DNA from: Basidiobolus meristosporus CBS 931.73
Taxonomy: Eukaryota; Fungi; Basidiobolomycota
Reading direction: 5' to 3'
DNA: 64,000 bases
Assembly (NCBI GenBank): GCA_002104905.1
Contig: MCFE01000314.1
Coordinates: 1 to 64,000 of the forward strand
Shown here one piece after another: positions 4,979-36,235 of this stretch (position 1 is the stretch's first letter; the number at the start of each line of letters is the position of its first letter). The notes under the pieces were generated by a model. The model saw only the letters and a list, made by a program, of their open reading frames with translations, did no database searches and was not told the origin of the DNA. The position numbers were made by a program, and so were the translations under genes.

Positions 4979-5284
4979 TTCACTCTCCAAATTACAGCTC
5001 AGGGTAGAACACTATCTGCTTTGATCAATTCTGCTTGATTGAGCCGTTAAACATTGAAATAGCGGTAACCATAGTTGACATATCAATCAAATCCGAACAT
5101 ATGTTTAACGCAAGTATTGGCATAAATCAACTACTTCATAAGATGAGATCACACATCAATGTTAGCGCTATGCAGTCCACCGATAAAGATCGACAACACT
5201 GATAAAGTGTACTACTGCATGTGTCTACTCTCATTATCCTGTAAATGTATCCAGTCGTTCACTCCTTCAAATCACCATCTCAAG

Positions 5285-5668
5285 ATGAAATACTCCATTG
5301 CAAAGCTACTACTTGTCGTCTCCGCTGCATTGGCTATCAACGCTACAGTCCTTGAGCGCTCCTACGACCCTAACTACAAGGGGGTAGGTCACGGTGGTGG
5401 CGATGACTACGATGCTGATTATGACGGCAATAGCCATGGAAGAAGAAAGAAGTATGGTGATGACTATGACGACGACTACGATGGTAATGGCGGTGGAAGA
5501 AGAAGGAGATACGATGGTGATGACTACGAGGATGACTACGATGGTCACGGTCACGGAAGAAGAAAGAAGCATGGCAATGATTACGATGATGACTATGATG
5601 GCAATGGACATGGAAGAAAGAAGCATGTTGGTGGTGGTGGCCGCAGTGAAGACTATGATGACTACTAG
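5285..5668 (+). CDS. Secreted Gly/Asp/Tyr/His-rich repeat protein, copy 3 (127 aa)
   Basis: MKYSIAKLLLVVSAALAINA signal peptide plus repeats; its flanks are the most diverged of the five. Confidence 0.88.
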   Translation: MKYSIAKLLLVVSAALAINATVLERSYDPNYKGVGHGGGDDYDADYDGNSHGRRKKYGDDYDDDYDGNGGGRRRRYDGDDYEDDYDGHGHGRRKKHGNDYDDDYDGNGHGRKKHVGGGGRSEDYDDY

Positions 5669-6148
5669 AGGCTTATAATACCTTCTTGATACCAAATACC
5701 TAATAAACTGTAATTTCTCCCGATTTACAAAGTTGCAAGATTCCTCAAATGATATTAGCTTCATGCTTGCATTGCTCACAAAAAATATCCGCTTCAAGCG
5801 TTCCCGTAAAATCATTGAATACTGATATTTGAAATTCAGGAAATTTACGGTAATTTGCTATTGGTGTGCTTATCCAACCAAGGAAACGGATCAATCTGTG
5901 GTCTATTAGAGCTTACTACAATAAGTTGACCTTCCGCCGAGGCTATAAGTAACATGTGGTGCATGGATTAAACTGACAATCCCCATGCCTTGACACTGCA
6001 GTTTGAAGGAGATCACTATCACATATCATGATTCGATTGCAAAGCTTAACAAATCCACAACACTGATGAAGCGTGCTACTCCCTATGCTTACTCTCACTA
6101 CCCTATATAAAAATCTGATCGGTCCCTCCTTCAAATCACTATCTCAGC

Positions 6149-17972: not shown

Positions 17973-18968
17973 TTACATAGCAAACCCATTCACCGGAAGC
18001 GAGTAATACTGGCTGAAATTTGAGTAGTTCAAATTTTGAGGATAGGTAAGATCGATGCAACTAGGTGAGGAGACTTTGTAGGCGTTGAGTCCGTATAGGG
18101 TTGGCGATGTGCTGTTCCTGGGAGAGCGTACCAACACCTTCTGGCCCATGGTCCTATGCAGGGAGTCTTGTAGCAAGACCTGTTGCCAGTTGTGACCATA
18201 GCCTGAGTGCGCATACATACGCTGCTGAGCTTTCTGGCGCCTTTGGCGTTCGTGTTGACGTTGCAGCTCGCTGCGTCTGTGTTCAAAGCGCTTTTGCCGC
18301 GCCAAATCGTCCTGAAGAAATACTCCGAAGTTGTGAACCAGCCAACGCTCGCCATTCATGAAGGTGAAGTTCTCCAGAGTGTCCAACCAAGTCCCAAACT
18401 CTAGTTCTGTGACGTGGACGTGGAAGTTGATACAGGTGAGGAACTCCATTTCCATCAAATTCAACTCCTCCAAAGTCATTCCGGAGATGTCGGACCAGGT
18501 CTTGTTCGTGTATGTGTGGTCCTCGAGATATTTGTTCGATAGCATCAAAGCAACAGTGAATATTCTAAACTCGGAGCCTTGTCGGCCACGAATGTATGGA
18601 TTCAACGTAGTGAACCGATGGATATACTTGAGCGTAAGCGCCACACCACTAGGAGTAATGGAAGCGGCCTTCAAGATATCCAGGCAAAAGCGACGAAAGC
18701 TCGACGATACATCGGCATATCTACTCTTTCCGTACCATAAGTGAAATACAGTTTGTGCAGCAAAATCGGCCAGATACGTGTTGTCGGTTGTGGAGGAGGA
18801 GTCGAAGGAGGGGGAGGGCGAAGGAGTGAGTGGCTCTATGCTTTGGGCATAACGAAGTGGTGGAAGGGTGGAAGGGATTTGCAAGGCGGAGCAGTGCTTG
18901 CTGAGCGAGTAGCAAGCAAGCGTGTCGGATATGTTGAGAAGTGAAGAGTCAGACATATTTGAATACAT
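17973..18968 (-). CDS. Pho80/Pcl/Clg1-type cyclin (331 aa, intronless)
   Basis: Cyclin box motifs: ALTLKYIHRF, FRIFTVALMLSNKYLEDHTYTNKTWSDISGM, LNLMEMEFL. Confidence 0.9.
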   Translation of the reverse strand: MYSNMSDSSLLNISDTLACYSLSKHCSALQIPSTLPPLRYAQSIEPLTPSPSPSFDSSSTTDNTYLADFAAQTVFHLWYGKSRYADVSSSFRRFCLDILKAASITPSGVALTLKYIHRFTTLNPYIRGRQGSEFRIFTVALMLSNKYLEDHTYTNKTWSDISGMTLEELNLMEMEFLTCINFHVHVTELEFGTWLDTLENFTFMNGERWLVHNFGVFLQDDLARQKRFEHRRSELQRQHERQRRQKAQQRMYAHSGYGHNWQQVLLQDSLHRTMGQKVLVRSPRNSTSPTLYGLNAYKVSSPSCIDLTYPQNLNYSNFSQYYSLPVNGFAM

Positions 18969-20862
18969 GATTTGAACCGCAAAATCCAAACTCTTGATGT
19001 CAATCAGCTAACTGGTAACTCGTATTTTTTACAACCAAAAAATTCAATGGCACTGAACAATCGTCTACAGCGGTGATGGGAGGGTTATATACGGCATGTA
19101 GTAAATAAAATCATGATCAGACAATGGCTATCAGTTATTAATATAGAATCAATAGAACTTTTTATTTCATCGAACAACTTTCATATTTTTGTTTTCTTCT
19201 GCTTATTTTTACCCAGATTTCGCGGATTTCGATGGATTGACCCACCTGCGGGCCAGCCTGCGGATAATATTTCATTATTGAATCTACGTAATTGGATCAG
19301 AGGTGTTTGTACATAGAGACACTTGATTAAAGGTTTGGCGAGGGAATGACATCGCAGCCATTGGCCAGGATCGGATTTGGAATGCGTGAAATATGTGAGA
19401 GCCTGTAGTTGAATTTCCGCCTTAGTCCACCTTCACTCAAGCGTTTCGTACACTCCAGTTTGTAATCAAAAAATGGGCCCCATTTGTCTACGAATGTTTA
19501 GAGATATGTGCTTTCCCGAATCGGCAAAGGGGTGCTTCTTGCAAAGAGCCGCCTCTGGTTTGATTGCTCGGAGATGCACTTGCCGAAAGCAACCATCTCG
19601 TTTCATGGACTGGGATTTCGATGATTTAGATGATTTAGATTATCTTTTTTATTCATGCGTATTACACGTATCGTGGCCAATCCCCGGCCATATCAGGCAG
19701 ATCAGGAGGTCAGTTGATAGCCCAAGTGGGAAACCCTAACCATTGACGAAAACGAAACATCCTGAGGGCGATGATTGGCCCTAGAAGACCCCGTTATTCT
19801 GCTAAGATGTTGATTAAATTGTCTGGATTCTCGCCATTGTCGCCAAATCCCGCGACCATTGATGAAAGTATGGGAAATGACCGATGCAAAGCGGCTGAGT
19901 GGTGGAAATTGATCGGTAATCGCGATGAGTGGTGGGTAATGCCCGATAACCCTGGATAAATGATGGTCAAGTGGAGGTTGGAAATGCTGATCTAGGCTAA
20001 TACATCAACAACCTCACCGCTCTGATTGGAATGGCCACAGAGACGTTGATTGGTGATGGCATAAATGAATTCGTTAGGAAATGTGTGCTTCACTTCACAG
20101 ACAATCATATCTGGATCTTTGTAAAACACCGGTGAATGTTGTAACAGACAGACCCCTGTCCTTGCAAGGAATCACGCGGTGTAATGAAGAGATCAAAGCA
20201 CGTTTCATAAGCCATATGGACTTGGAATCAGAGCTGCGTATCAGACCAATGGCATCGCCCGACCCACTCGCCAACAATGAGCCAGTGCCATGAATGAGTA
20301 CGTCATCCCATTGGCCAGGCCGGTGCCCTTCGCCCTCGTATTTTAGGGTCTGTTTTAGTCAGGGATCCCTCGTACTCTAGGGTTAGGATTGAGCAAAAAT
20401 ATCCGTATTCATGATCTTGCATACAATGTGGTACTGGTGATAAGGAGTAGTAGTCATCCTCCAATAGCAGGGGCGATTCCATTGAGAAAGATCCGAGTAG
20501 CTCCCCTCAAAATGGGCCGCCTAGACACTCGACTTGTTGGCGGCTATTTTTGGCTGTGGATTGATCATTAACAATGGTGAAACTCATGCAAAGCTATTAT
20601 TATGTATGCGATGTTTTATACGCTTCGTACGCGAGCGTAGGGAATTAATCACTGGCTGGGTGCCGAGGGATGGTCTCTTATCGGGCACATCTACTTGGTT
20701 GCATTCATGGTTTTATGTATTAAACAGCTGAGTCAATGCTTTTTACAGAGTCAAGAATATGGTTCATTAAGGTTGGGCGATTATTCTAGACTCAATATAT
20801 GAGGGAGTGAGGGCCGAATGAGGTTTCTGCATAAATTATTCGTGAAATCATGCATATATGCA

Positions 20863-23800
20863 TCATTCGTAATGGTGAGGGCTGGAGGGTGTGCTCATGA
20901 CTCGTGGCCCGATTAACCGGCTTCTCCGGTTCATAGCCCGATCTGGTGGTGTGAGGGAATTATTTGTTGAGGTGGAGGGTTTCTTGGGTTGGACATAGTA
21001 GGGCGAAGCCATTTCGGGGAGGTAGGTTGGAGTAGGCTGGCTCAGCCGACTGAAGCCCCTTTTCTGCTGGATTTCGTTGGCCGAGAACCTGTCGAAGAGC
21101 AGTTCTGGTAATTTACAAGTGGCATTTTCAACCGGCCTCGGCGTAGTGTAAACCAGCGGTACGTGGGATTGGGGGGCTGGAAATCTCTCGGTTTTGAAGT
21201 ATGGGTGTTGTGGGCTTTTCCGAGTTTCGTTGTCATTCTCCTTCTCGTCTTTCCACTCGGACCAGTACTTCTCAAGAATGTCGTCCTCAAAGGGATCTAT
21301 CTCTTCTTCAATCAAACCCTCGCCCTTTACATTCGAGCTAAGTTTGCGAGTAGCTCCCCAGGTAAAGTCATCGAAATGCCAAAATGCGTAGATTGGTAAG
21401 ATCAGATTCCAGATCGGGGTGGCGAGAATGAATACCAACATCCAAAGTAAATAAACAAATTTCCTAGTGGTCAATAAGATGACCACGGATTGTAGTATGA
21501 AAATGGAGCCAATAAATATCAAGGGTAGAAGGACGTCCGCGCCATAAGCAGCCTTAAATATCAGGTATAGCAGGAAGATGCAGGAAGAGGGCATGGTTAC
21601 GGTCTGAATCAACTCCAAAGTAACGAAAAATTGCATTGAGCAGCAAAATATTCCACACAGCTCCGACACCAGCATCAATTCCAACAGGTTGTGAACGGTC
21701 GAGTTAATCCAACGACGTCGTTGACTCAAGAGTACTTTGAAATCCTCAGGTACCACTGTTTTACAGATGGCGCTTGACACGAAGATAAGCTTTCGTTTCG
21801 GAAAAGTTCGAAGCATCAACGTAGTCAGGTATCTGTCTTCTCCGAGAAGCAGCAGGTTTTTCTTATGAAGTGTATCTACTACGTTTGTGGAGTATGCCGA
21901 CACTATGTCTGGGTTCGCCAGTATGGGGACGGATTGGTTGTCTTGTTTTGGCGCTTTAATGCGATACATGCAAAAGCATCCAGGAAGACAGGTAACGCCT
22001 CCAAAGATGGACTCAAAGGCTTTTCCGAGGTGGTGAGATGTGTAGTATTCATACACCTAGAGATAGAGCGCCTCTGTTAGCAATGGTTATCAACAAAAGT
22101 TCGAAATCACAGCTGATTACTTGGATCATTGTCACCCACGATTTTCGTTTGTTTGCAACCTTCGTCTCCCCACACAAACCCATCACCATAGGGTCTTTGT
22201 TCATAGCATCCACCATGATGGAGACGCTTTCTGGCTCAACATATGTGTCGGCATCAACCATTAGCACGATCTCAAACTTATCAGGGCTTGTATCCATCAG
22301 GCTTCCAATCCTCTCGAAAAGCTCGAACTCCAAAGGGGTTAGCTTCCCGTTAACGCATATCTTGCTCAGCCACTGAATAAGGATCAGCTGGGAGTCGCGT
22401 TTCCCACGATTTCCCGCTCTGGGTCTTTTCCGTTCTTCACCAAATCCGCATTTGACTATGACTACCATGGGAACACGACGGCCTTGGCAAGAGTAAAACC
22501 CTACGTGAACCTGAGCCATGTTCTTCCGCATAGCGCCTTGGCCGATTGAGATGTAGGGCTTGGGTTCAGGCGAGAGGAGCTGCGAATCCCAAGGTTCCAG
22601 CATCGACAGGGTAATCTCAGGCGTGGATTTATCATTTCCAGACCCGGTGACGTCCCCGTCGCAAACGATGAAAAGAAGCTTGTGCTTATCGTCGTAGGTT
22701 GACAAAGCCAGGGAGTCTAGCGTAGCACGGATGGACTTTTCGCTTTCCGAGTAGCAAGTAACCAGCATGATCACATAGGTCAGGTCTTTCTTGGCGACCG
22801 CATCAGCTTCCTTTTTTGCCTTGCGATTGTAGGAGCGAGATATTATCCAGCTAAACAGTATCGAGCATATGTATTTGAAGAAGATGATACAGAACAGGAT
22901 TGTTGAGCATGTGATGACAATCAGGTTGGATGCAAAGCAGCCGAGCGTTGTCCCATCCACCCTGCCCACCAGAAGCTGGTCGTTGAAGCAGGGAATCAGC
23001 TCAGCCAGACTAGGGTCCCTTAGGATATCGAGAGTAGCGTCTCGACCAACAAAACGCAAAAGCTGCTGGTTGTTGTCCCCAAAATAGGACTCGTTCTTTG
23101 ACAGGTACTTCTCCAACGAGTAGACTCTTTCGTTGTACACGAAGAGTTTTCGGTCCTTATCTCGAATCCGGGACCAAGAAAATGCCACGTAGTTGTTGAT
23201 GCTTGTTTCCTCCAGGTCCCGACGGGCGTTTCGACTTGTGTGGCAGTGCAGTCTAGAATCCCTATTTACAAACTGACACGTGGGCGTTTTGGTTGGCCAT
23301 CGTTTGCACAAAGACCTTTCTGGGTCCGAGGGGAAGAAATCGCTAATATCTTTGCCTACGAGGGACTCAATCAGAGGCTGCAGGTCCTCGTCTTTCAGGG
23401 GAAGAATCGGCCGATGGAACTGATATTTGAAGTAATCTCGAACATTGTATAGTCTGCCTCGCACGATCATTAGCTGCATATCCTTAGAATCTGGCCCGTA
23501 CCTATTGAGAACGTCCTCGGGAAAGATAGGGGTGTTCTTTGTACATACCATTTGCGCGAACCCAAACGTAGCAAACCCAAGAAACCCGGAGATCAAGATG
23601 ATGATGAGGCATAGGGCTGCTTTCTCTCTCCAAGCTTGTATGGTGTCAGGGTCGTCCATCTTAGAGACACTTCTTAGACACTTGTCGAAGCAACAGAACG
23701 TAAGGACCTGGGAGCAGGATCTCCATTTGCTGGTCCTCCGGTTGTCGTTTGGGTCCAGTTGATCGTCCCAGGATTTCATTCCCAAGTGATTTCCAATTTT

Positions 23801-25010
23801 TCCTCCGGGCACGTTTGTTGCTGGCAACCCTCGCAGGGATCGTCTTCTCAGAGACCTTGACATTTTCTGGACAAACGGGGAAAATGAAGGTAGCTGTGGC
23901 GGTCTGTGAGGTTGAGCGGGTGTGTACATATATTGAGCTTGGCGCTCGTTCGCGATGGGATTTCCTTCAACGGAAGAGAAGTCAGGTTCGTTTATCGTTG
24001 ATGCTGGAATGATGCCAGGTAAATGAGGGATGGGATCCAGAGCGGAATGAATTGCAGGATGCTTGCCCACAACAGGGATCGTGTCTCTGCTATGTTCTTG
24101 AAATGTGGTTGCTTTTTTTGAATGTTTTATCAACAGTCTAGCTGTCTTGGATTGACCCGCACTATATGCTAAATCCAGTGCGGTTTTCCCGTTCAAAGCC
24201 TCAATAGAGGGATCAGCGCTGGCAGTAAGTAATCTACAACAGATAGCATACTGTCCCGAGTATGCAGCCAGCATCAAAGCGCTCCATCCAAACTATTGAA
24301 AAACGAGAGTTAGAGTCAGGCCAGCGAGGCATGTAGGCGAGATTCTACCTTGTCAGTCAGATCAACACTAGCCTTGTATTTGAGTAGGGTCTCCACAACC
24401 CCGATGTGGCCAGCGTAGCTTGCCATCATTAATGCAGACTTGGAGGTGATGTCTCTAGAGTTGATCTTGGCTTCCCCATGCTTCAGCAGCAGCACGGACA
24501 AGGAAACGAATCCGTTGTATGCCGCAATGATCAGCGGGCTCATTCCTTCCTTTGGAAGTATGAGAGTTAGGGTCGGGGACATCTTGAATTCTGTATTGGA
24601 AACGTACATTATTCTTCATATTCACATCGGCCCCAGCGCGAATCAGAATCTTGGCTGCCTTGACCTGACCGAAGTTACAAGCGTAATGTAGAGCTGTCTG
24701 GCCTTCGTCGTCTGGCAACACACGGTTATTGTTGGACGGGTCTGGGCAGAGATAAAGCAGGGTTACCTTTCTGGTCCAGGTTGACAGGCCTCAGGGAACA
24801 CAGGTAAGATAGCATCTTGAGGCTGTTTGAGGTGACAGCGGCAGATAAAGGGGTTTTCCCATTGGCATTTCGAATGTTATTGAGATTGTAGGGGGATTTT
24901 TCGAGCAGCTTCCACAGAGTAGAGACTCTGTCCTGTTTGATTGCCTTGAAAATAATATGTAGTGACTCAATATGTGAGGGCTCGACGCACTCATTTGAAC
25001 CACTCTGCAT
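20863..25010 (-). CDS. Ankyrin-repeat / class IV-like (division 2) chitin synthase fusion, about 1304 aa, 5 exons
   Basis: Exons 25010-24767, 24711-24608, 24549-24349, 24292-22121 and 22056-20863 join in frame through 55-64 nt GT-AG introns. Seven ankyrin repeats, then WREK, a cytochrome-b5-like region, TCYSES, GKRDSQ, DADT, LPGCF, GEDR and QRRRW. Confidence 0.93.
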
Positions 25011-25747
25011 GAAATATCTATAGCAGGAATTGTGACGCCCTGGTACGAGGTGCCGAAGGATGGATTGATGGTAAAGAAAAGAGGAAATGGTGAGATCCAA
25101 GACTAGCACCAATGATGTGTGGCTGAGCTTAGTAGAAAGGAAAATCAGTTGATCGATGGGGGTAACAGCGGAGGGAAGTGAGGATGGTACAATCCAGTAT
25201 CGAGAAGTGAGAACCATTGAGGTGTGAAGTTCAGAAGTTACTTCATTTGCAAGAGTAACCGAGGAATCCGTTGTCGGTTCGTTTTTGTTGCTGCGCGAGT
25301 CCCCCTGAATCCCATTCTCTACGCGCTGACCACGCGGCTGGTTATTCTGGTGGCAGATACTCGTGGCAACGATTTCGGAGTGCAGATCGCTTTCATTTCA
25401 TTCGGGAGGATGGTGATCAGAGCCTCGGTGTTACTGACGACAGGCAAGCCTATACTCATTGAAGTCTTCATGTAAATGCGCCTCTATGCATTCTCCAAGC
25501 TGCCTAGGAAATAAGTTCGTTGTCCATGCGCTATGTACAGATTCTCGTTTTAGCTACCATATTGTGTAATATGCGATGCGCTATATTTCACTGATACATC
25601 TGTCGCTCCCGCTACCTTTTTATCCTTAACGAAGCAGCTGTAGCTCGACTTTTCTCAACAGAAAGGTCCTAAAGCTCCTTTTGGTTTCCCTTTCCTTAAC
25701 CCTAATCTCCCTACTAAACCCCCTTAATCCATCTAACCTTTCGAATC

Positions 25748-26915
25748 ATGAAGGTTCCAAGCTTTCCTGATATCTGCCGTAAAGCGCCATTGACCATATG
25801 CCCATTGCTCGGTGTCGGGGGCAAAGGTATTGAGCCACAGTGCTATTCACGGAACTTTGAGCTGGGCGAAACGATCTTATTTGAGTTTGGTAGATCCTTG
25901 GTCTGTCTCCTCTGCCCCATTCCTACACTAACGCATGTGCAGCGGCCATTGTAGTTTATCTTGCAGCGATAGTGATGGGTGTGATAATGGTCTATCATGT
26001 CAATATGAAATACACAGCAGTAGGTAAGTAGCTCTACAGCCAACGCCACTCACCCGGCTCTAACAAGCCCTCCAGGACGTAAAGAGATGGCAATCTTCTT
26101 CTATTTGTACATGTTAGCCACAGTGGTGGAGATGCTTCTTGTTTCAGGAGTGATTTCACCAGCGTTTGCAGTATATCCGGTAAGAGAACAACCATTCCAT
26201 CGTCTCTAGCTTTTGCTCACGACGATTCTCCAATAGTGGATGACTGCTGCCCATATCGGACTGATAAGTGCTTCCATTTGGGCTCTCTTTCTGAACGGAT
26301 TCATCGGATTCCAATTCATCGAGGATAGTACCCCCCTCTCCCTCTGGGTAAGGCGTCGTGTTTCTTGCGCTCATCCCTGATTTACGTAATTTACTTGGAT
26401 TTCAGGGAATTCGTTGGACATCTCTGCTGGTATTTGGAGTGGCATACTTCATATCCATCGGAACCACTCAGGAATTCTTCAGATTCCTATCTCCTACGAA
26501 CAGCTTCCCGCTGTGGATCATGTACTTCGTGCTGAACGGCGCGATGATTCTGATCTATTTCCTGCTTCAGATTGTGTTGGTCTTCAAGACGTTAGATGTT
26601 CGCTGGCCATTAGGTAATCCAGTGAAACGAATTGGCTGAAGCATTGCGTGCTGATATTTCAATCCAGGGGATATAATACTTGCCGCGGGATTTTTCGGGA
26701 TCGGCCAGGCCGCACTATACTTCTTTTCGGATCCGATATGCGTGTATACCAACCACTACATCGACGGAGTCTTCTTCGGGGTGTTGTGCACGTTGCTCTC
26801 GGTGATGATGGTATACAAGTATTGGGACTCAATCACCAAGGAGGATCTGGAGTTCGCTGTGAGCAGTGTCAATCCGATTTGGGAGATGAAAATGAGCCAC
26901 AAAGACCTCTCATAG
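25748..26915 (+). CDS. CHS7: Chitin synthase ER export chaperone Chs7, paralog 1 (multi-exon)
   Basis: Motifs [86 protein letters not shown]. Confidence 0.92.
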
Positions 26916-27117
26916 TGCAAAGATATCATTGACGACGCTTCCCAATATATCGCCCTGTGTAGATATCTAAACTCGACCATAGATCCGCTGTACCCACCCC
27001 TTTCACCCATCCTCTGACGCGAGTGCCCATGTAAACAGTCTCATTAAAGAAAGCCATGATTTATTTACCAACCATCCTTGTTAGCTATAGTACATGAGGA
27101 GCAAAGGACCGTGGACT

Positions 27118-27689
27118 TTAGATAAAAGGATTGGCGATTTCTTCAGAGCCATCAAGAGGCGAAATTAACACTACGGAGGGGCCTCGACAAACAATTAGAC
27201 CAAGGTTGCGGGTTTGATCCAAAAGGCGATTGGGATTCTCGGGATCTTGTGTGTTCAGGGTTAGTAACAGATCGGTCGGAGTCAAAGCCGCTTAATACGT
27301 ACCTCTAAGGCATTCGTTAGTCTCATCCAGGACCAGGTTTAAGAGAGGATCGAATCCTTTTAGCGAGCCCACCACTATCCAAGGCCAAAGGTGAGTGGAG
27401 GGTGGTTCTACCTAAAGCTGCAATATATGACTAACCTTCACGGCCACCGCTAAACTTCACTCTGATCTGCTTATCCATGTACTTTCCTAAATCGAGGATG
27501 GATTCTTTCTTGGGCTTTTGCTCGAACGAGCCACCGCGATTTCCACGCCCAGAATTTCCACCTCTGCCACCACGACCGCCTCTGTCATTACCACGTCCAC
27601 GTCCCTACGAAAACAGTCAAGTATGGAGGTTAAAACGGCGATCTCCACCCCAACAGTATAGCATCTTTGAAATTTACTCTGTCAGACAT
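27118..27689 (-). CDS. LSM7: U6 snRNA-associated Sm-like protein Lsm7 with N-terminal RGG tail (4 exons)
   Basis: Spliced product MSDR-GRGRG...KKESILDLGKYMDKQIRVKFSGGRE-VVGSLKGFDPLLNLVLDE...TRNLGLIVCRGPSVVLISPLDGSEEIANPFI. Confidence 0.92.
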
Positions 27690-27844
27690 CGTTTACAAAA
27701 TAAAGTGATATAACAACAATTAACACTGGAAGCGAGATATACACAAGTCGAAGAAAAAATTCTGGTGAATTCGTAAGTTGGGATTGAAAAATCTACATTC
27801 ATTTCTCGTTTATTTTAATCTAATCAGTGATTTTGGTTGATTGA

Positions 27845-29895
27845 TTATGTCTCCACCCATTTGAAGGTTCCCATCAAGAGCTTACTATTCGGGAGTTTGC
27901 CTGGGCAAGGGGAGAGGAAGGTGATCTTGGACTTGGCATCATCCACCTCCGAGCTACGTTTCAACGGGGTTAGTGGTTCATTCTAGGTTAGCAACTTTCC
28001 AAGGAACTTACGTGTAGATAAACCCTGCGACGTTGCTACGAAGCAAGTCCGCTTCATCGGTTGACTCCGAGTTGATCACTGCTAGAATAGAGTGGAACAA
28101 CATATCCCCGGGTTTGAGGCTTACCAGTTGAGTCTCACTAACTTTCCGATCTATGCCAATGGGGAGGGCTGATGATGGAGCAAGAGAATCTGTACGATTG
28201 TGTTTGTAAATAGCCGCCCTATTGCTAAATGCTGCCGCCACAACCTACCTTCACCCACACGATAAACAGTGATGTCTTCATAGCTGACAAGGGTGGAGTA
28301 AGGTGACAGCTCCATCTTTGGAGTGCCATAGAAATATTCCCGGATTTTCTGCATTTGATCTGCTCTTCTGAATGCTGGGTCTCGGTTGACAACCTAGATG
28401 ATGGGATTATCAATGTCACGAAAAACCAACGCACCAACCCAACGCGTGGCTTACCCCTCCCGATTTTGACAGCTTTAATATGGTGAGCCCGGGATTGTTC
28501 CCGTTGGCCCTCACCATCTCACTGTACAATCTTTCTTGGCCCACAACCAGCAACACATTCACTAGTCAAAGGTAAGTATACGCTGTTCTACGCCAACATA
28601 GAAAACATGCCCACCGGAAAAAGCGTTGATTGCGTTTTGGATGATATCATGACCGACGTTGTTGATCAGCCCGTTGGTATCGATGATGATTCCAGAAGCC
28701 CTAGCTATTCCCTCGGAAATTTGGATTCAGCATCGGCCAGAGTGAGGAAAGCATACTTGGGCATGACTTACCATCGTTGTCTTCTTTAACACGTGCCCTC
28801 ACCGTATCTGCCATCTGGTTTACTAGCAGGTTGAATAACTTTGGATTCTCCGCCGGGCTGGAGTATCCGTAGTAATAGACCAGTGGCATGGTGAAAGTCC
28901 CCATTCCAGGTACGTTTGCGGCTGAATAACCGAATCCCTCCTCGGCATCAATCATCTGGTTGATCGATGTAGCAGAGAGTGTACCTGGCATTGTGATCGA
29001 ACCCTAAATGCCATTGAGATAAGTCAAAGGGAGTGGACAACAGACTGGCCGGGTTTGAGGACGTACTTCCTCGGGATCCATATCGACATATATGGGTTCT
29101 CTCCCGCGTTTCAATGCATAGTTGAGAAGAATTCTAGCGAGCGAGGTCTTTCCGGCGTCAGTAGGTCCGATAATCATGATCTACAAGGAGAGTTCTCAAA
29201 GTGTTACGATGGCTTCAGGTAAGAAGGTCTCCAGGGATTTAACTCTACCCTAGGCCCTCCTGAGTTGGTCGCCTCGGCCCGCTCACGAAGATTCTCTAGG
29301 GCGAGGTGTGTGTTTAAATAACTGATCATTGGTGTCTCGTTTGCAACATATTCGACGGCGCATTTCCCAGCAAGGTATTCGCCAAGTAAAGTCAAGGAAT
29401 AATGGGTCCAGTGATTGATAAAGGAAACTTTGAATGGATTTCGTTAAAGGATATTTCAAAAGTGCATCCATGCCAAGTGAATAAAGCCAGCTTTTTCCCA
29501 CAGAACTCATACTCTCGACCAACAATGAGCTCTGTGCCAAATATCTCCGCTGTACCGGATAGCAACTATTTCGGGGGAGAGGCGAATATCAGGTTGAGTA
29601 AACGTATGTGGCGAATTAATCGCGTAAGGTATGAAGTATCTCGAGTTTATTCACTCGGGAATGAGACATGTAGATCCATGTCAACATGGAGAGGTGGATT
29701 CCCAGATGGTTCCATACCCGATTCTATTGAGGACCTACCTTTATTGATATTTTGTCTTTGTAGTCTACTTCGAATCTAAACTCATGTTCAGGATCGAGCT
29801 TCCATTCCTTTGGAGCGCCCTATTTTGAACTCGATTAGCCATTTCGGGTCGTCAAATCTAAAAGTGTAGAAGGTTACTTGTTGCTGACTGTTCAT
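27845..29895 (-). CDS. CLP1: mRNA cleavage/polyadenylation factor Clp1 (multi-exon)
   Basis: EHEFRFEV, GTAEIFGTEL, FTWHGC, YVANETPMISYLN, GPRV, KIREYFYG, APSSALPIG, NVAGFIY, FLSPCPGKLP. Confidence 0.9.
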
Positions 29896-33877: not shown

Positions 33878-35130
33878 TTAATACCGGCTGGGATAGTAGT
33901 CCGACTCTGGGTCTTCCAAGAACCCCTTGACCTCCCATTGATCTGGCTTGTAATCCACGGTATATTCCAGGTCATCTTTGGTGATGGAATCCCAGTACTT
34001 GTAGACCATCATGACTGCGAACAGGGTGCACAGGACAGTGAAGAACAGCCCATCAATATAATGGGAGATCAAGGAGCACACATCGTTGGTAAACACCAAC
34101 AGAATAACCTGCCCTATGGCAAATGATAAACCGGCCATCAGCATGTCCCCTAGGATAAAGCAGAATTAGTATGGACAATCAGGCGACTTGTGGTTGGCAT
34201 CGGTCTACCTAGAGGCCAGCGGTCGTTTAGGGTGTTAACGACCAGGATGATTTGAAGAATGAAATAGATCAGGAGAGCAGCGCCGTTAAAGATGAAGTAA
34301 ATGATCCAAAGTATCAATGGATTTCCAGCACTAAGCACGCCGGAACTACCGAACATGTTGCGGAAAGTTGCGACTGACACGAAGAAAGTCAACCCCCAAA
34401 CAAGCAAAGAAGTGATACGGATTGACTAGAAGTTTCGTTAGGATCGGATTGAATGCAGATCAACAGCAGTGTAGTGTTTACCCAGAGCGATAAAGGAGTT
34501 CCGTCCTCGGCAAACTGAAATCCGACGAACCCGTTCAGAAGCAAGCACCATACCGAAGCGGTTATCAATCCAATATGTGCGGCTACAAACCACTATATCA
34601 TCACCGGAACATGTAAATAAATGGAATGGCCAAGTGAGAGGAATTGAAGGGAACTAACGGGATATACGCTTGAAGAGATGGGGATAAATCCTCCAATTAG
34701 CAAGAACTCTAGAAGCACCGTCACCGTGTACAAGTAGAAAAAGGACAGCATTTCCTGACGACCTGGTAGCTTCTATTAGTATCCGGACACCAGTTGGCTC
34801 AGCTTTGCCTTTTTAACTTGCACTTACCGACTGCGGTGTATTTAACTCGAATATTGTAGATCATTACCACCGTCATAAGTATCGCGATAATGTACGCGGC
34901 CAGTGCACCTTTAACATAGCAAGAAGTCAATCACCCTGTTGTTGGTTTAGCCCGGTAGGCCAGTGAATTCACATACCAGGTTGGAAAACCAGAAACCCGC
35001 CGAAGTCTAAATTACGCGAAAAGCATACGGGAATGGTGCGAGAGGCCTGTGGGCCAACCAAAGGGCATAAGGGAAAGGCCAGAGTGCCGCAAAACTGGTC
35101 AAAGCTGCCAAACTTTAGTGTTGTCAGCAT
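33878..35130 (-). CDS. CHS7: Chitin synthase ER export chaperone Chs7, paralog 2 (multi-exon)
   Basis: [85 protein letters not shown]. Confidence 0.92.
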
Positions 35131-36235
35131 TGGGTATTATGTACGAGTTGTGTGAAGAGTAAGTACAAAGTGAGAATGAAAGGATGAAGGCGAAACTGGA
35201 ATAGTTCCTAAAATGTGGTTGCAAGAATCAAAAACGCTACAAGGAGAAGGGTGAGAGTTGCCGAGTGCTGGATGTTAATATATATTGAGACGGTTGAAAA
35301 TGGAGGCAGACGCTACAATAAGAACAATATGATTCAACTGGAATTCAACCCAGATATTCGATGGCGCATCCTAAGACTTGTTTGCACCTGCCATTTTGGG
35401 ACTCAATCAGACTTAAGAACATGCCTAGCTATAGATTACCAATTTCCCCTAATTAGACAATAGTGGTGTGGATGCCCAACGACAATAACCAACAAAGGAC
35501 TGGAATTTTCGGTTGTCAACCACCCACTACAATGCGAACAATCTCTTCGTTGGCAGCGAGAATTGTGAACAACTCCATTGTGCCGACGGTCAGTTGGGAT
35601 GACAACTAGAATATCACATATTGGCCAGGTTCCGTTCTCTGCATTGTTAACCAAATTTGTCTCGACACACAAATGATGTTAGGTTTTTTTTCCATTTTCG
35701 GCCACAATTGTCCCCACAGAAGGACCAGTCAATGAGATTGATTGGTTGCATATTAGATTAGATTTAAACTTTTAAAATCACCCATGATAGTAAGCCAGTG
35801 TGCGCTCTTGATTGGCCGATATTCAGGAATTCATTCTTATTTTTAGCTTTTATCAAAGCTCGAATTGTACAGGCGAGATTATTCAGGTTGACGTATTGGG
35901 CATAACCCGCGCTCACCGTGTCACCAAGCGGAGGTTACTTCTTCGAAATAGTGCATAAATTATGTTCAACTTTGTGACACAAAACGGATTCATTCCAGCC
36001 AGAACACTCGAGTTTCCATATGTACTTCGTTTCATCTGAACTTCTTTATGAACACCACGGGGATTGAAAAGCGAGGTAAATGAAAACTAGCATTTGAGCA
36101 TCGTCAGCGAAAATGACCAGGGGATTTACACCGAAAATCTGTGACCAGTGATGGGTTGTCTGGCCAGTGGGTCTAAGCTACGCAATGTAGAGCCCAATCA
36201 GTTCCCGTGCTATGCATTAATCAACACCACATGAT

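What the first reader, a model, noticed from the sequence alone, without database searches (positions are those of the whole stretch)
20863..25010. Chitin synthase with seven N-terminal ankyrin repeats
Seen: ankyrin repeats 6-7 lie in the same uninterrupted 2172-nt exon as the cytochrome-b5-like and glycosyltransferase regions, so the fusion does not depend on my splice model. Repeats 1-5 join through three clean introns. Catalytic motifs DADT, GEDR and QRRRW are intact. Established: division 2 chitin synthases usually carry a b5-like domain, with or without a myosin motor (classes V/VII); ankyrin arrays are not a standard class feature that I know of. Inference: a cytoplasmic ankyrin scaffold may replace the myosin motor or activator binding for localisation or regulation.
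Basis: partly seen in the sequence, partly recalled or inferred. Interest (0 to 1): 0.75.

Follow-up and report, generated by a model that had tools for sequence, protein, structure and literature searches.

The report
Ankyrin-headed chitin synthase, ancient fungal class
This is a real, intact fungal chitin synthase gene with seven ankyrin repeats at its front end. It is not a one-off: it belongs to an old, conserved family found across non-Dikarya fungi that the chitin synthase literature has not named, and in the Zoopagomycota loci examined it sits head-to-head with the gene for the export chaperone Chs7.

Summary
A five-exon minus-strand gene (25010..20863) encodes a 1304-aa protein. In order it has seven ankyrin repeats, a ~150-aa disordered linker, TM1, a lumenal CHS4/b5-like domain, TM2, and a GT2 chitin synthase core with DADT, QVYEY, GEDR and QRRRW intact. 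Repeats 6-7 and the synthase share one 2172-nt exon.

The architecture is not rare. I found it in 17 Glomeromycotina species, Endogone, Calcarisporiella, Basidiobolus, Entomophthora, Syncephalis, Coemansia and Blastocladiella. A paper's supplement lists it in Rozella. On a catalytic-domain tree these proteins form their own lineage inside superclass IV (core clade 96/98). They sit apart from the two ankyrin-free groups, which hold the Dikarya, chytrid and Mortierella sequences.

The ankyrin domain is as constrained as the catalytic domain (dN/dS about 0.03-0.04). It keeps conserved residues at ligand-contact positions, including one invariant Trp. A Chs7 gene lies head-to-head with the synthase here, and also in B. 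ranarum, Syncephalis and Coemansia.

The papers I could search do not describe the class. One supplement lists ankyrin repeats in "only 1 CHSIV protein". The most likely role is a cytosolic partner-binding module on a Chs3-like, Chs7-dependent synthase; this is inferred, not shown. No RNA evidence was available.

The parts
24767..25010 (-). Exon 1: start codon (ATG at 25010), N-terminal cap repeat and ankyrin repeat 2. It ends in a split codon.
   Evidence: Ank_2 E=1.2e-05, just below the curated cut-off. The frame is open upstream to 25217, so the start is provisional. tblastx similarity to B. ranarum begins at about 25058.
24608..24711 (-). Exon 2: ankyrin repeat 3.
   Evidence: Ank E=5e-11. 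The flanking introns 24712-24766 and 24550-24607 are GT..AG, at the same positions as in the B. ranarum gene.
24349..24549 (-). Exon 3: ankyrin repeats 4 and 5.
   Evidence: Ank E=3.5e-13. Intron 3 is 24293-24348.
24107..24292 (-). Start of exon 4: ankyrin repeats 6 and 7, including the invariant Trp186 (24284-24286) of the GW[ST][AP]LM signature.
   Evidence: Ank_2 residues 1-59 of the exon; W186 in 33/33; signature in 40 of 43 Ank-CHS.
23657..24106 (-). Pro/Ser/Arg-rich disordered linker (aa 246-395) with RRRS and RRTS sites and two conserved Trp near the membrane.
   Evidence: pLDDT below 50 in the ortholog model. dN is 0.42 against 0.10 in the Ank domain. Composition and sites; conservation.
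23564..23620 (-). TM1, preceded by the invariant QAWREK motif.
   Evidence: Hydropathy 2.48. QAWREK is present in nearly all family members.
22964..23188 (-). CHS4 / cytochrome-b5-like domain, in the Cys-containing loop between TM1 and TM2.
   Evidence: PF22997 E=6e-12; Cyt-b5 only E=3.8e-4. The loop has 5 Cys and 1 sequon.
22868..22924 (-). TM2.
   Evidence: Hydropathy 2.36.
22121..22867 (-). N-terminal half of the GT2 catalytic domain, with DADT at 22244-22255. This is the end of the 2172-nt exon 4. Intron 4 is 22057-22120.
   Evidence: Chitin_synth_2 E=5.5e-84.
20863..22056 (-). Exon 5: C-terminal half of the catalytic domain (GEDR 21832-21843, QRRRW 21709-21723), C-terminal membrane helices, a low-complexity tail and the stop codon.
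   Evidence: Chitin_synth_2 E=5e-122.
25011..25747 (.). 737-bp region between the two divergent start codons; a presumed shared promoter.
   Evidence: Positions of the two ATGs. The Coemansia pair has a comparable gap between the two called genes, 5263 to 6001. Promoter activity was not tested.
25748..26915 (+). Multi-exon Chs7 (chitin synthase export chaperone) gene, head-to-head with the synthase.
   Evidence: PF12271 hits on four ORF pieces plus the start ORF, covering profile positions 4-286. It is collinear with B. ranarum Chs7.

Best explanation
**What is shown.** The gene is intact and under purifying selection. It encodes a class-IV-type (Chs3/CHS-4-like) processive chitin synthase whose N-terminal region carries a seven-repeat ankyrin solenoid, tethered by a ~150-aa flexible linker to the first membrane helix. 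It belongs to an ancient orthologous lineage of superclass IV, here called Ank-CHS. That lineage is present in Blastocladiomycota, Zoopagomycota, Glomeromycotina, Endogonales and Calcarisporiella, and by a paper's table in Rozella. I did not find it in Dikarya, Mortierellomycotina or chytrids. In the Zoopagomycota loci examined, the gene is paired head-to-head with a Chs7 gene.

**What is inferred.**
- The ankyrin array faces the cytosol.
- It works as a docking module. Its conserved ligand-contact positions (Trp186; Lys153 and Lys219; aromatic residues in repeats 4-6) bind a conserved partner.
- That partner decides where and when the enzyme is delivered, retained or switched on at the plasma membrane.
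- This docking takes over part of the trafficking role that the unstructured N-terminus plays in yeast Chs3.
- Like Chs3, the enzyme probably needs Chs7 to leave the ER, and the shared intergenic region would co-express the two genes.
For: - **Gene model and motifs:**
- **Fusion inside one exon:**
- **Same introns in B. ranarum:**
- **Constraint:** dN/dS of the Ank region is 0.03-0.04, and its dN (0.10) equals that of the GT domain (0.09). Linker dN is 0.42.
- **Structure:** seven helix pairs at pLDDT 98, followed by a disordered linker. The model superposes on gankyrin and AnkB R8-14.
- **Taxonomic spread:**
- **Tree:** core clade 96/98, and no ankyrin in the 39-row sister clade, itself supported at 98/94.
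- **Truncated models:** one in-clade 'non-Ank' member was checked and is a truncated gene model, with ankyrin exons found upstream.
- **Single origin:** GW[ST][AP]LM signature in 40 of 43 proteins, including Blastocladiella and a relative of the Rozella protein.
- **Conserved contact positions:**
- **Topology:** two hydrophobic segments lie between the array and the GT domain. The Chs3 N-terminus is cytosolic (PMC5412288).
- **Chs7 pairing:**
Against: - There is no transcript or protein evidence for this gene; no RNA run was listed.
- No partner is identified.
- AlphaFold2 gave no sign of any linker segment docking into the groove.
- No ankyrin-clade-specific motif was found in the C-terminal tail.
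- The Chs7 pairing is absent in Blastocladiella, Calcarisporiella and Geosiphon, and at the second Basidiobolus paralog. It is therefore not a family-wide feature.
- The branch joining Blastocladiella and the Rozella group to the core clade is weak (90/38).
- Absence from Dikarya and other groups rests on top-hit lists, not on exhaustive genome searches.
Confidence: 0.6

Rival explanations
1. The ankyrin array acts in cis as a regulatory or autoinhibitory module. It would bind the enzyme's own cytosolic parts (catalytic domain, linker or C-tail) and be released by phosphorylation of the basic linker sites, substituting for Chs4-type activation.
For: - The linker carries RRRS (aa 332) and RRTS (aa 368) sites.
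- Among the closest structural matches is AnkB R8-14 bound to its own autoinhibition segment.
- The array is tethered by a long flexible linker that could reach the GT domain.
Against: - The linker is poorly conserved across the family.
- No linker segment gained confidence in the AlphaFold2 model.
- The PxLPx[ILFVM] motif is present only in the window protein and its ortholog: 2 of 32 proteins against 1.07 expected by chance.
- The C-tail motif is shared with ankyrin-free class IV enzymes.
Confidence: 0.2
2. The ankyrin array is an oligomerisation module. It would replace the N-terminal oligomerisation function described for yeast Chs3.
For: - The Chs3 N-terminal region is cytosolic, and Chs3 forms di-/oligomers from the ER onward (PMC5412288).
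- The array occupies the equivalent position before TM1.
Against: - From general knowledge, ankyrin solenoids usually bind other proteins rather than self-associate.
- The conserved residues lie at ligand-contact positions.
- Nothing here tests self-association.
Confidence: 0.1
3. The fusion is an artefact of gene modelling (an ankyrin gene next to a synthase gene), or the locus is a decaying pseudogene.
For: - There is no RNA evidence.
- Public gene models of relatives are often wrong: the B. ranarum model is split and the B. meristosporus model is truncated.
Against: - Repeats 6-7, the linker, TM1 and half of the GT domain lie in one uninterrupted 2172-nt exon.
- There are no stops in the 3915-nt CDS.
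- dN/dS is about 0.03-0.04.
- All catalytic motifs are intact.
- The same architecture is found in more than 40 proteins from four or more phyla.
Confidence: 0.02

Closest known systems
Class IV chitin synthases (S. cerevisiae Chs3, N. crassa CHS-4; superclass IV of Goncalves et al. 2016, classes IVa/IVb of Li et al. 2016)
   Same: - Chitin_synth_2 core with QxxEY, EDR and QRRRW.
- A CHS4/b5-like domain before the catalytic domain.
- No myosin motor, DEK_C or CS1N domain.
- A cytosolic N-terminal region before TM1.
- It groups with them against class V at 100/100.
- A Chs7 chaperone gene is associated with it.
   Different: - It falls in neither of the two ankyrin-free groups, the ones that hold the Ascomycota sequences and Cryptococcus Chs1. 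It forms a separate lineage.
- Its N-terminal region is a folded seven-repeat ankyrin solenoid plus linker, not an unstructured segment.
- The lineage was not found in Dikarya.
Class V/VII chitin synthases with an N-terminal myosin motor domain
   Same: Both are division-2 synthases in which a cytosolic protein-interaction or transport domain is fused in front of the b5-like and catalytic regions. Both fusions plausibly serve localisation.
   Different: The added domain is different (ankyrin against myosin motor) and there is no DEK_C. The branch is different too. Rozella is reported to have both class IV and class V synthases, so one does not simply replace the other.
Oomycete chitin synthases with an N-terminal MIT domain (from my own knowledge, not tested here)
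   Same: A small cytosolic protein-interaction domain is fused to the N-terminus of a chitin synthase and is thought to direct trafficking.
   Different: The domain is unrelated, the eukaryotic lineage is different, and no sequence comparison was made here.
Seven-repeat ankyrin proteins such as gankyrin and AnkB repeats 8-14
   Same: Same fold and repeat number: rmsd about 2 A over about 220 columns, target-normalised TM-score 0.87-0.90.
   Different: Only 26-32% identity, which reflects the repeat consensus. This gives no evidence of a shared partner. The GW[ST][AP]LM signature is specific to the synthase family.

Membership tests
Fungal chitin synthase, division 2, superclass IV | GT2 core matching Chitin_synth_2 (PF03142) with catalytic motifs D-x-D, QxxEY, EDR and QRRRW | tested here: met
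   (E=5.5e-84 and 5e-122). DADT 863, QVYEY 907, GEDR 979, QRRRW 1019.
Fungal chitin synthase, division 2, superclass IV | Cytochrome-b5-like / CHS4 domain upstream of the catalytic domain; no myosin motor, DEK_C or CS1N | tested here: met
   PF22997 E=6e-12, with Cyt-b5 below threshold. No PF00063, PF08766 or PF08407 hit on any exon.
Fungal chitin synthase, division 2, superclass IV | Groups with class IV sequences to the exclusion of class V on a catalytic-domain tree | tested here: met
   87-row superclass IV side, separated from the myosin-bearing outgroup at 100/100.
Class IVa (Chs3/CHS-4 orthologs) or class IVb | Falls inside the clade that holds the Ascomycota class IV sequences (IVa), or the one that holds Cryptococcus Chs1 and relatives (probably IVb) | tested here: not met
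   both lie in the 39-row ankyrin-free clade (98/94). The window protein lies in the other clade (core 96/98). No class-labelled reference sequences were in the tree, so equating these clades with IVa and IVb is my inference from taxon content.
Class IVc of Goncalves et al. 2016 (reported only in Mucoromycotina) | Same clade as the published IVc sequences | not tested
   No IVc accessions were recovered from the paper's supplements. No Mucorales sequence appeared in the ankyrin clade.
Ankyrin-repeat domain | Tandem 33-residue helix-turn-helix repeats matching the Ank profiles and folding as a solenoid | tested here: met
   exons 2-4 above the Pfam cut-offs, exon 1 just below; seven helix pairs at pLDDT 98, in the ortholog; gankyrin and AnkB.
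Chs7-dependent cargo (Chs3 type) | Needs the Chs7 chaperone for ER exit | not testable with these tools
   Circumstantial only: a head-to-head Chs7 gene here and in B. ranarum, Syncephalis and Coemansia.
Active chitin synthase | Makes chitin from UDP-GlcNAc | not testable with these tools
   Only motif integrity and purifying selection.

The most novel reading that the evidence does not exclude
Ank-CHS is a third, previously unnamed ancestral lineage of class IV chitin synthases. It would date to near the base of Fungi and have been lost in Dikarya. Its conserved ankyrin contact surface would bind a specific conserved partner, for example the cytosolic tail of its co-transcribed Chs7 or a cortical landmark. 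That would give early-diverging fungi a way of positioning chitin synthesis that needs neither a myosin motor nor the yeast Chs4/Bni4 route.
Probability: 0.3. Interest if true: 0.65.

Novelty: new variant of a known kind. Interest (0 to 1): 0.48.

Why it matters
Chitin synthase biology and classification rest almost wholly on Dikarya. This gene points to a conserved, domain-defined lineage of class IV enzymes. It spans arbuscular mycorrhizal fungi, insect and animal associates (Entomophthora, Basidiobolus), mycoparasites (Syncephalis), Blastocladiella and probably Rozella.

Large surveys either did not report the architecture or dismissed it as a single odd protein. Part of the reason is that many public gene models are truncated, split or misnamed.

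The lineage offers three things:
- a clean diagnostic signature: the ankyrin array with the GW[ST][AP]LM motif;
- a testable handle on how non-Dikarya fungi target chitin synthesis;
- a conserved Chs7-synthase gene pair that suggests a dedicated chaperone-cargo unit.

It does not change what is known about the catalytic mechanism.

Tried and rejected
- **RNA evidence.** No sequencing run was listed for the locus.
- **Solved structures.** A sequence search of the PDB with exon 4 returned only ankyrin proteins and no division-2 synthase.
- **Linker motif.** I looked for a family-wide PxLPx[ILFVM] motif (the ANKRA2-type ligand, from memory) as a possible in-cis ligand. It is present only in the window protein and its ortholog, 2 of 32 against 1.07 expected by chance. 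Rejected.
- **C-tail motif.** The FD..IP.KKW.EW motif is shared with ankyrin-free class IV enzymes, so there is no ankyrin-clade-specific tail motif. Rejected.
- **Docking in the model.** AlphaFold2 pLDDT gave no sign that any linker segment docks into the groove.
- **Neighbouring ORFs.** Pfam on short ORFs for LSM and Clp1 gave nothing. Synteny was shown by tblastx instead.
- **Second synthase.** No other chitin synthase lies in the window, including next to the second Chs7 copy.
- **First word search.** It drew its words from the poorly conserved first 500 residues and gave only 8 hits. The profile and region searches were needed.
- **Class IVc.** The supplements held as text did not give IVc accessions.
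- **Earlier scan notes.** The two notes returned for this window (a repeat-peptide gene array and a PB1-NAD kinase fusion) do not bear on this gene.
Full report
**1. The observation**

On the minus strand I rebuilt a five-exon gene. The exons are 25010-24767, 24711-24608, 24549-24349, 24292-22121 and 22056-20863. The four introns are 55-64 nt long and GT..AG. The CDS is 3915 nt, has no internal stop and encodes 1304 aa.

Pfam finds the following:
- Ankyrin families score above their cut-offs in exons 2 and 3 and in the first 59 residues of exon 4. In exon 1 the matches are significant (Ank_2 E=1.2e-05) but just below the curated cut-offs.
- Further along the same exon 4 lies the CHS4 domain PF22997 (E=6e-12).
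- The N-terminal half of Chitin_synth_2 is also in exon 4 (E=5.5e-84). Exon 5 carries the other half (E=5e-122).
- The Cyt-b5 match is below threshold (E=3.8e-4). "b5-like" is fair, but "CHS4 domain" is the better name.

DADT, QVYEY, GEDR and QRRRW are all present. The fusion of at least two ankyrin repeats to the synthase therefore does not depend on any splice model.

**2. Support for the spliced part**

The best database hit is a Basidiobolus ranarum protein, 75-78% identical. The window from 28829 to 18820 is collinear with that B. ranarum contig over all 11.3 kb of the fetched locus. The window therefore most likely comes from a Basidiobolus-like fungus of another species, since synonymous sites are saturated.

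The three ankyrin-region introns lie at exactly the same codon positions in the B. ranarum gene. Between the two genes:
- the ankyrin region has dN 0.10 and dN/dS about 0.03-0.04;
- this is the same constraint as the catalytic half (dN 0.09) and the TM1-to-TM2 region (dN 0.07);
- the linker has dN 0.42;
- the introns are only 50-65% identical.

An AlphaFold2 model of the ortholog's N-terminal region, built with 33 aligned relatives, shows seven helix pairs at pLDDT about 98. The first pair is an atypical cap. About 150 disordered residues follow, and then helices next to the membrane. Foldseek superposes the solenoid on the seven-repeat proteins gankyrin and AnkB R8-14 at about 2 A. "Seven repeats" holds.

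No RNA run was listed for this locus, so there is no direct transcript evidence. The frame also stays open upstream to an ATG at 25217, so the start at 25010 is provisional.

**3. Anatomy and topology**

The order of parts is:
- ankyrin repeats 1-7 (aa ~15-245);
- a Pro/Ser/Arg-rich linker (246-395) with RRRS and RRTS sites;
- the invariant QAWREK motif and TM1 (408-426);
- a 200-aa loop with five Cys that holds the CHS4 domain (552-626);
- TM2 (640-658);
- the GT2 domain;
- a C-terminal cluster of membrane helices and a low-complexity tail.

Two hydrophobic segments separate the array from the catalytic domain, which must face the cytosol to reach UDP-GlcNAc. The array is therefore predicted to be cytosolic. 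In yeast Chs3 the region before TM1 is experimentally cytosolic and the region after it is extracellular and glycosylated (PMC5412288). This agrees with the prediction.

**4. How widespread it is**

The first word search found few relatives, because its words came from the variable N-terminus. A profile search and a catalytic-region search then showed Ank + CHS4 + Chitin_synth_2 in many taxa:
- 17 Glomeromycotina species, in two paralog groups;
- Endogone sp. and Calcarisporiella thermophila;
- Basidiobolus ranarum (two paralogs), Entomophthora muscae, Syncephalis fuscata and many Coemansia;
- Blastocladiella emersonii;
- unnamed metagenome proteins.

With a local scan I counted 43 ankyrin-bearing synthases, the window's own included, among the 295 synthases collected.

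I built a careful IQ-TREE of the catalytic region (91 rows, 492 columns) rooted on myosin-bearing class V. It splits superclass IV in two:
- **Clade A.** A 39-row clade (98/94) with no ankyrin at all. It holds the Ascomycota class IV sequences, Cryptococcus Chs1, Mortierellomycotina, chytrids and the ankyrin-free Basidiobolus paralogs.
- **Clade B.** A 48-row clade (90/38) made of Blastocladiella, a Rozella-plus-metagenome group, and a well-supported core of 44 rows (96/98). In the core, 35 rows carry the array.

The nine core members without the array have very short N-termini (catalytic domain starting at residue 135-461, against about 680), with one exception. For the one I checked, B. meristosporus, the ankyrin exons lie in the genome just upstream of the annotated start. 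At least some "losses" are therefore annotation errors.

The signature GW[ST][AP]LM in the penultimate repeat is present in 40 of 43 proteins, including Blastocladiella and a metagenome relative of the Rozella protein. This argues for a single origin of the fusion. Absence from Dikarya, Mucorales, Mortierellales and chytrids is what the hit lists show. It is not an exhaustive test.

**5. What the literature says**

None of these papers mentions ankyrin in its main text:
- Li et al. 2016, which left some early-diverging sequences unclassified as "others";
- Goncalves et al. 2016;
- a 2025 review of fungal chitin synthases;
- a 2026 chytrid study;
- Liu et al. 2017.

Liu et al. state that 14 extra domains occur in a very small number of synthases without a clear distribution pattern. 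Their Table S3 lists PF12796 as existing "only in 1 CHSIV protein". That protein is Rozella allomycis EPZ33276.1. I did not test that protein myself; the Rozella model I retrieved is shorter and lacks the array. Further full-text searches found nothing on the architecture.

The family is visible in databases: an ESM Atlas cluster of 50 members is 100% Ank plus Chitin_synth_2. As a class, it is undescribed in the papers I could search.

**6. The Chs7 neighbour**

Upstream of the synthase and on the opposite strand lies a multi-exon Chs7 gene (25748 to 26915). The two start codons are 737 bp apart. The same head-to-head pair occurs in:
- B. ranarum;
- Syncephalis fuscata, Zoopagales;
- Coemansia, Kickxellales, with the two called genes ending at 5263 and starting at 6001.

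It does not occur in Blastocladiella, Calcarisporiella or Geosiphon, nor at the second Basidiobolus paralog. The Entomophthora contig ends too soon to tell.

Chs7 is the dedicated ER-export chaperone of yeast Chs3. A pair kept in all three Zoopagomycota lineages where the upstream region could be read points to co-regulation and to Chs3-like trafficking of this enzyme. This is inference from gene order. A second Chs7 copy lies about 8 kb away in the window, with no synthase beside it.

**7. What the ankyrin array most likely does**

Shown: the array is as constrained as the catalytic domain. Conservation also goes beyond the structural repeat consensus. I used the positions that are varied in designed ankyrin binders because they contact ligands; this numbering is from my own knowledge. 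At those positions:
- Trp186 (repeat 6, position 5) is invariant in 33 of 33 sequences;
- Lys153 is 91% and Lys219 is 85% conserved;
- position 13 is aromatic in repeats 4 to 6 (82-94%).

Inferred: this stripe of conserved contact residues binds a conserved partner. The array then acts as a cytosolic docking module on a flexible tether that controls delivery, retention or activation of the enzyme.

I could not identify the partner. Three tests for binding in cis were negative or uninformative:
- no linker segment gained confidence in the model;
- a PxLPx motif is confined to this gene and its ortholog;
- the C-tail motif is shared with ankyrin-free enzymes.

An autoregulatory role and an oligomerisation role remain possible rivals.

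"Replacing the myosin motor" is not supported. The lineage lies inside superclass IV, which never carried the motor. Rozella is reported to have both class IV and class V synthases.

**8. Verdict**

The feature is real and the gene looks functional. The window's gene is an ordinary member of its family. The family itself is an unrecognised, ancient, domain-defined variant of class IV chitin synthases.

This makes it a useful comparative-genomics finding with clear experiments attached. It is not a new kind of system. I score interest at 0.48 and class it as a new variant of a known kind.

Noticed in passing
window 33926-35137 (minus strand): A second Chs7-like gene lies about 8 kb from the first. 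tblastx against B. ranarum Chs7 gives 54-66% identity in pieces, E=4e-56. No chitin synthase lies next to it.
   Followed up: partly
window 18820-28829 and L001 1-11292: The window is collinear with B. ranarum contig JASJQH010000214.1. The order of the called genes there is Clp1, LSM, Chs7, Ank-CHS, cyclin. Synonymous sites are saturated, so the window is from a related but different species.
   Followed up: partly
L001 4001-8593; L002 3260-5000: Public gene models of this family are often wrong. The B. ranarum ortholog is split into a 1035-aa and a 389-aa product at the position of intron 4. The B. meristosporus paralog is annotated without its ankyrin exons, which lie upstream of the called start.
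   Followed up: yes
Hit tables; L003 2738-4843: Many Ank-CHS proteins in NCBI (Basidiobolus, Entomophthora, Coemansia, Blastocladiella) are named 'ATP-dependent RNA helicase'. This looks like a propagated misnomer. In Blastocladiella a DEAD-box helicase gene lies directly upstream on the same strand.
   Followed up: no
window aa 272-277 and 315-320 of the protein (linker, within 23657-24106): Two PxLPx[ILF] motifs (PHLPGI and PQLPSF) lie in the linker. The second is shared with the B. ranarum ortholog only, so they are not a family feature.
   Followed up: yes
P0028 and P0270 (Diversispora eburnea and D. epigaea); P0128 (Ambispora gerdemannii): Inside the ankyrin clade, a Diversispora paralog pair starts just before TM1 in two species, which may be a real loss of the whole N-terminal region. 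An Ambispora protein has about 860 N-terminal residues with no Pfam match in place of the array.
   Followed up: no
window 25011-25217: The synthase reading frame stays open for 69 codons upstream of the ATG at 25010. Only the last ~16 codons resemble B. ranarum. This is probably 5' UTR, but the true start is unverified.
   Followed up: partly
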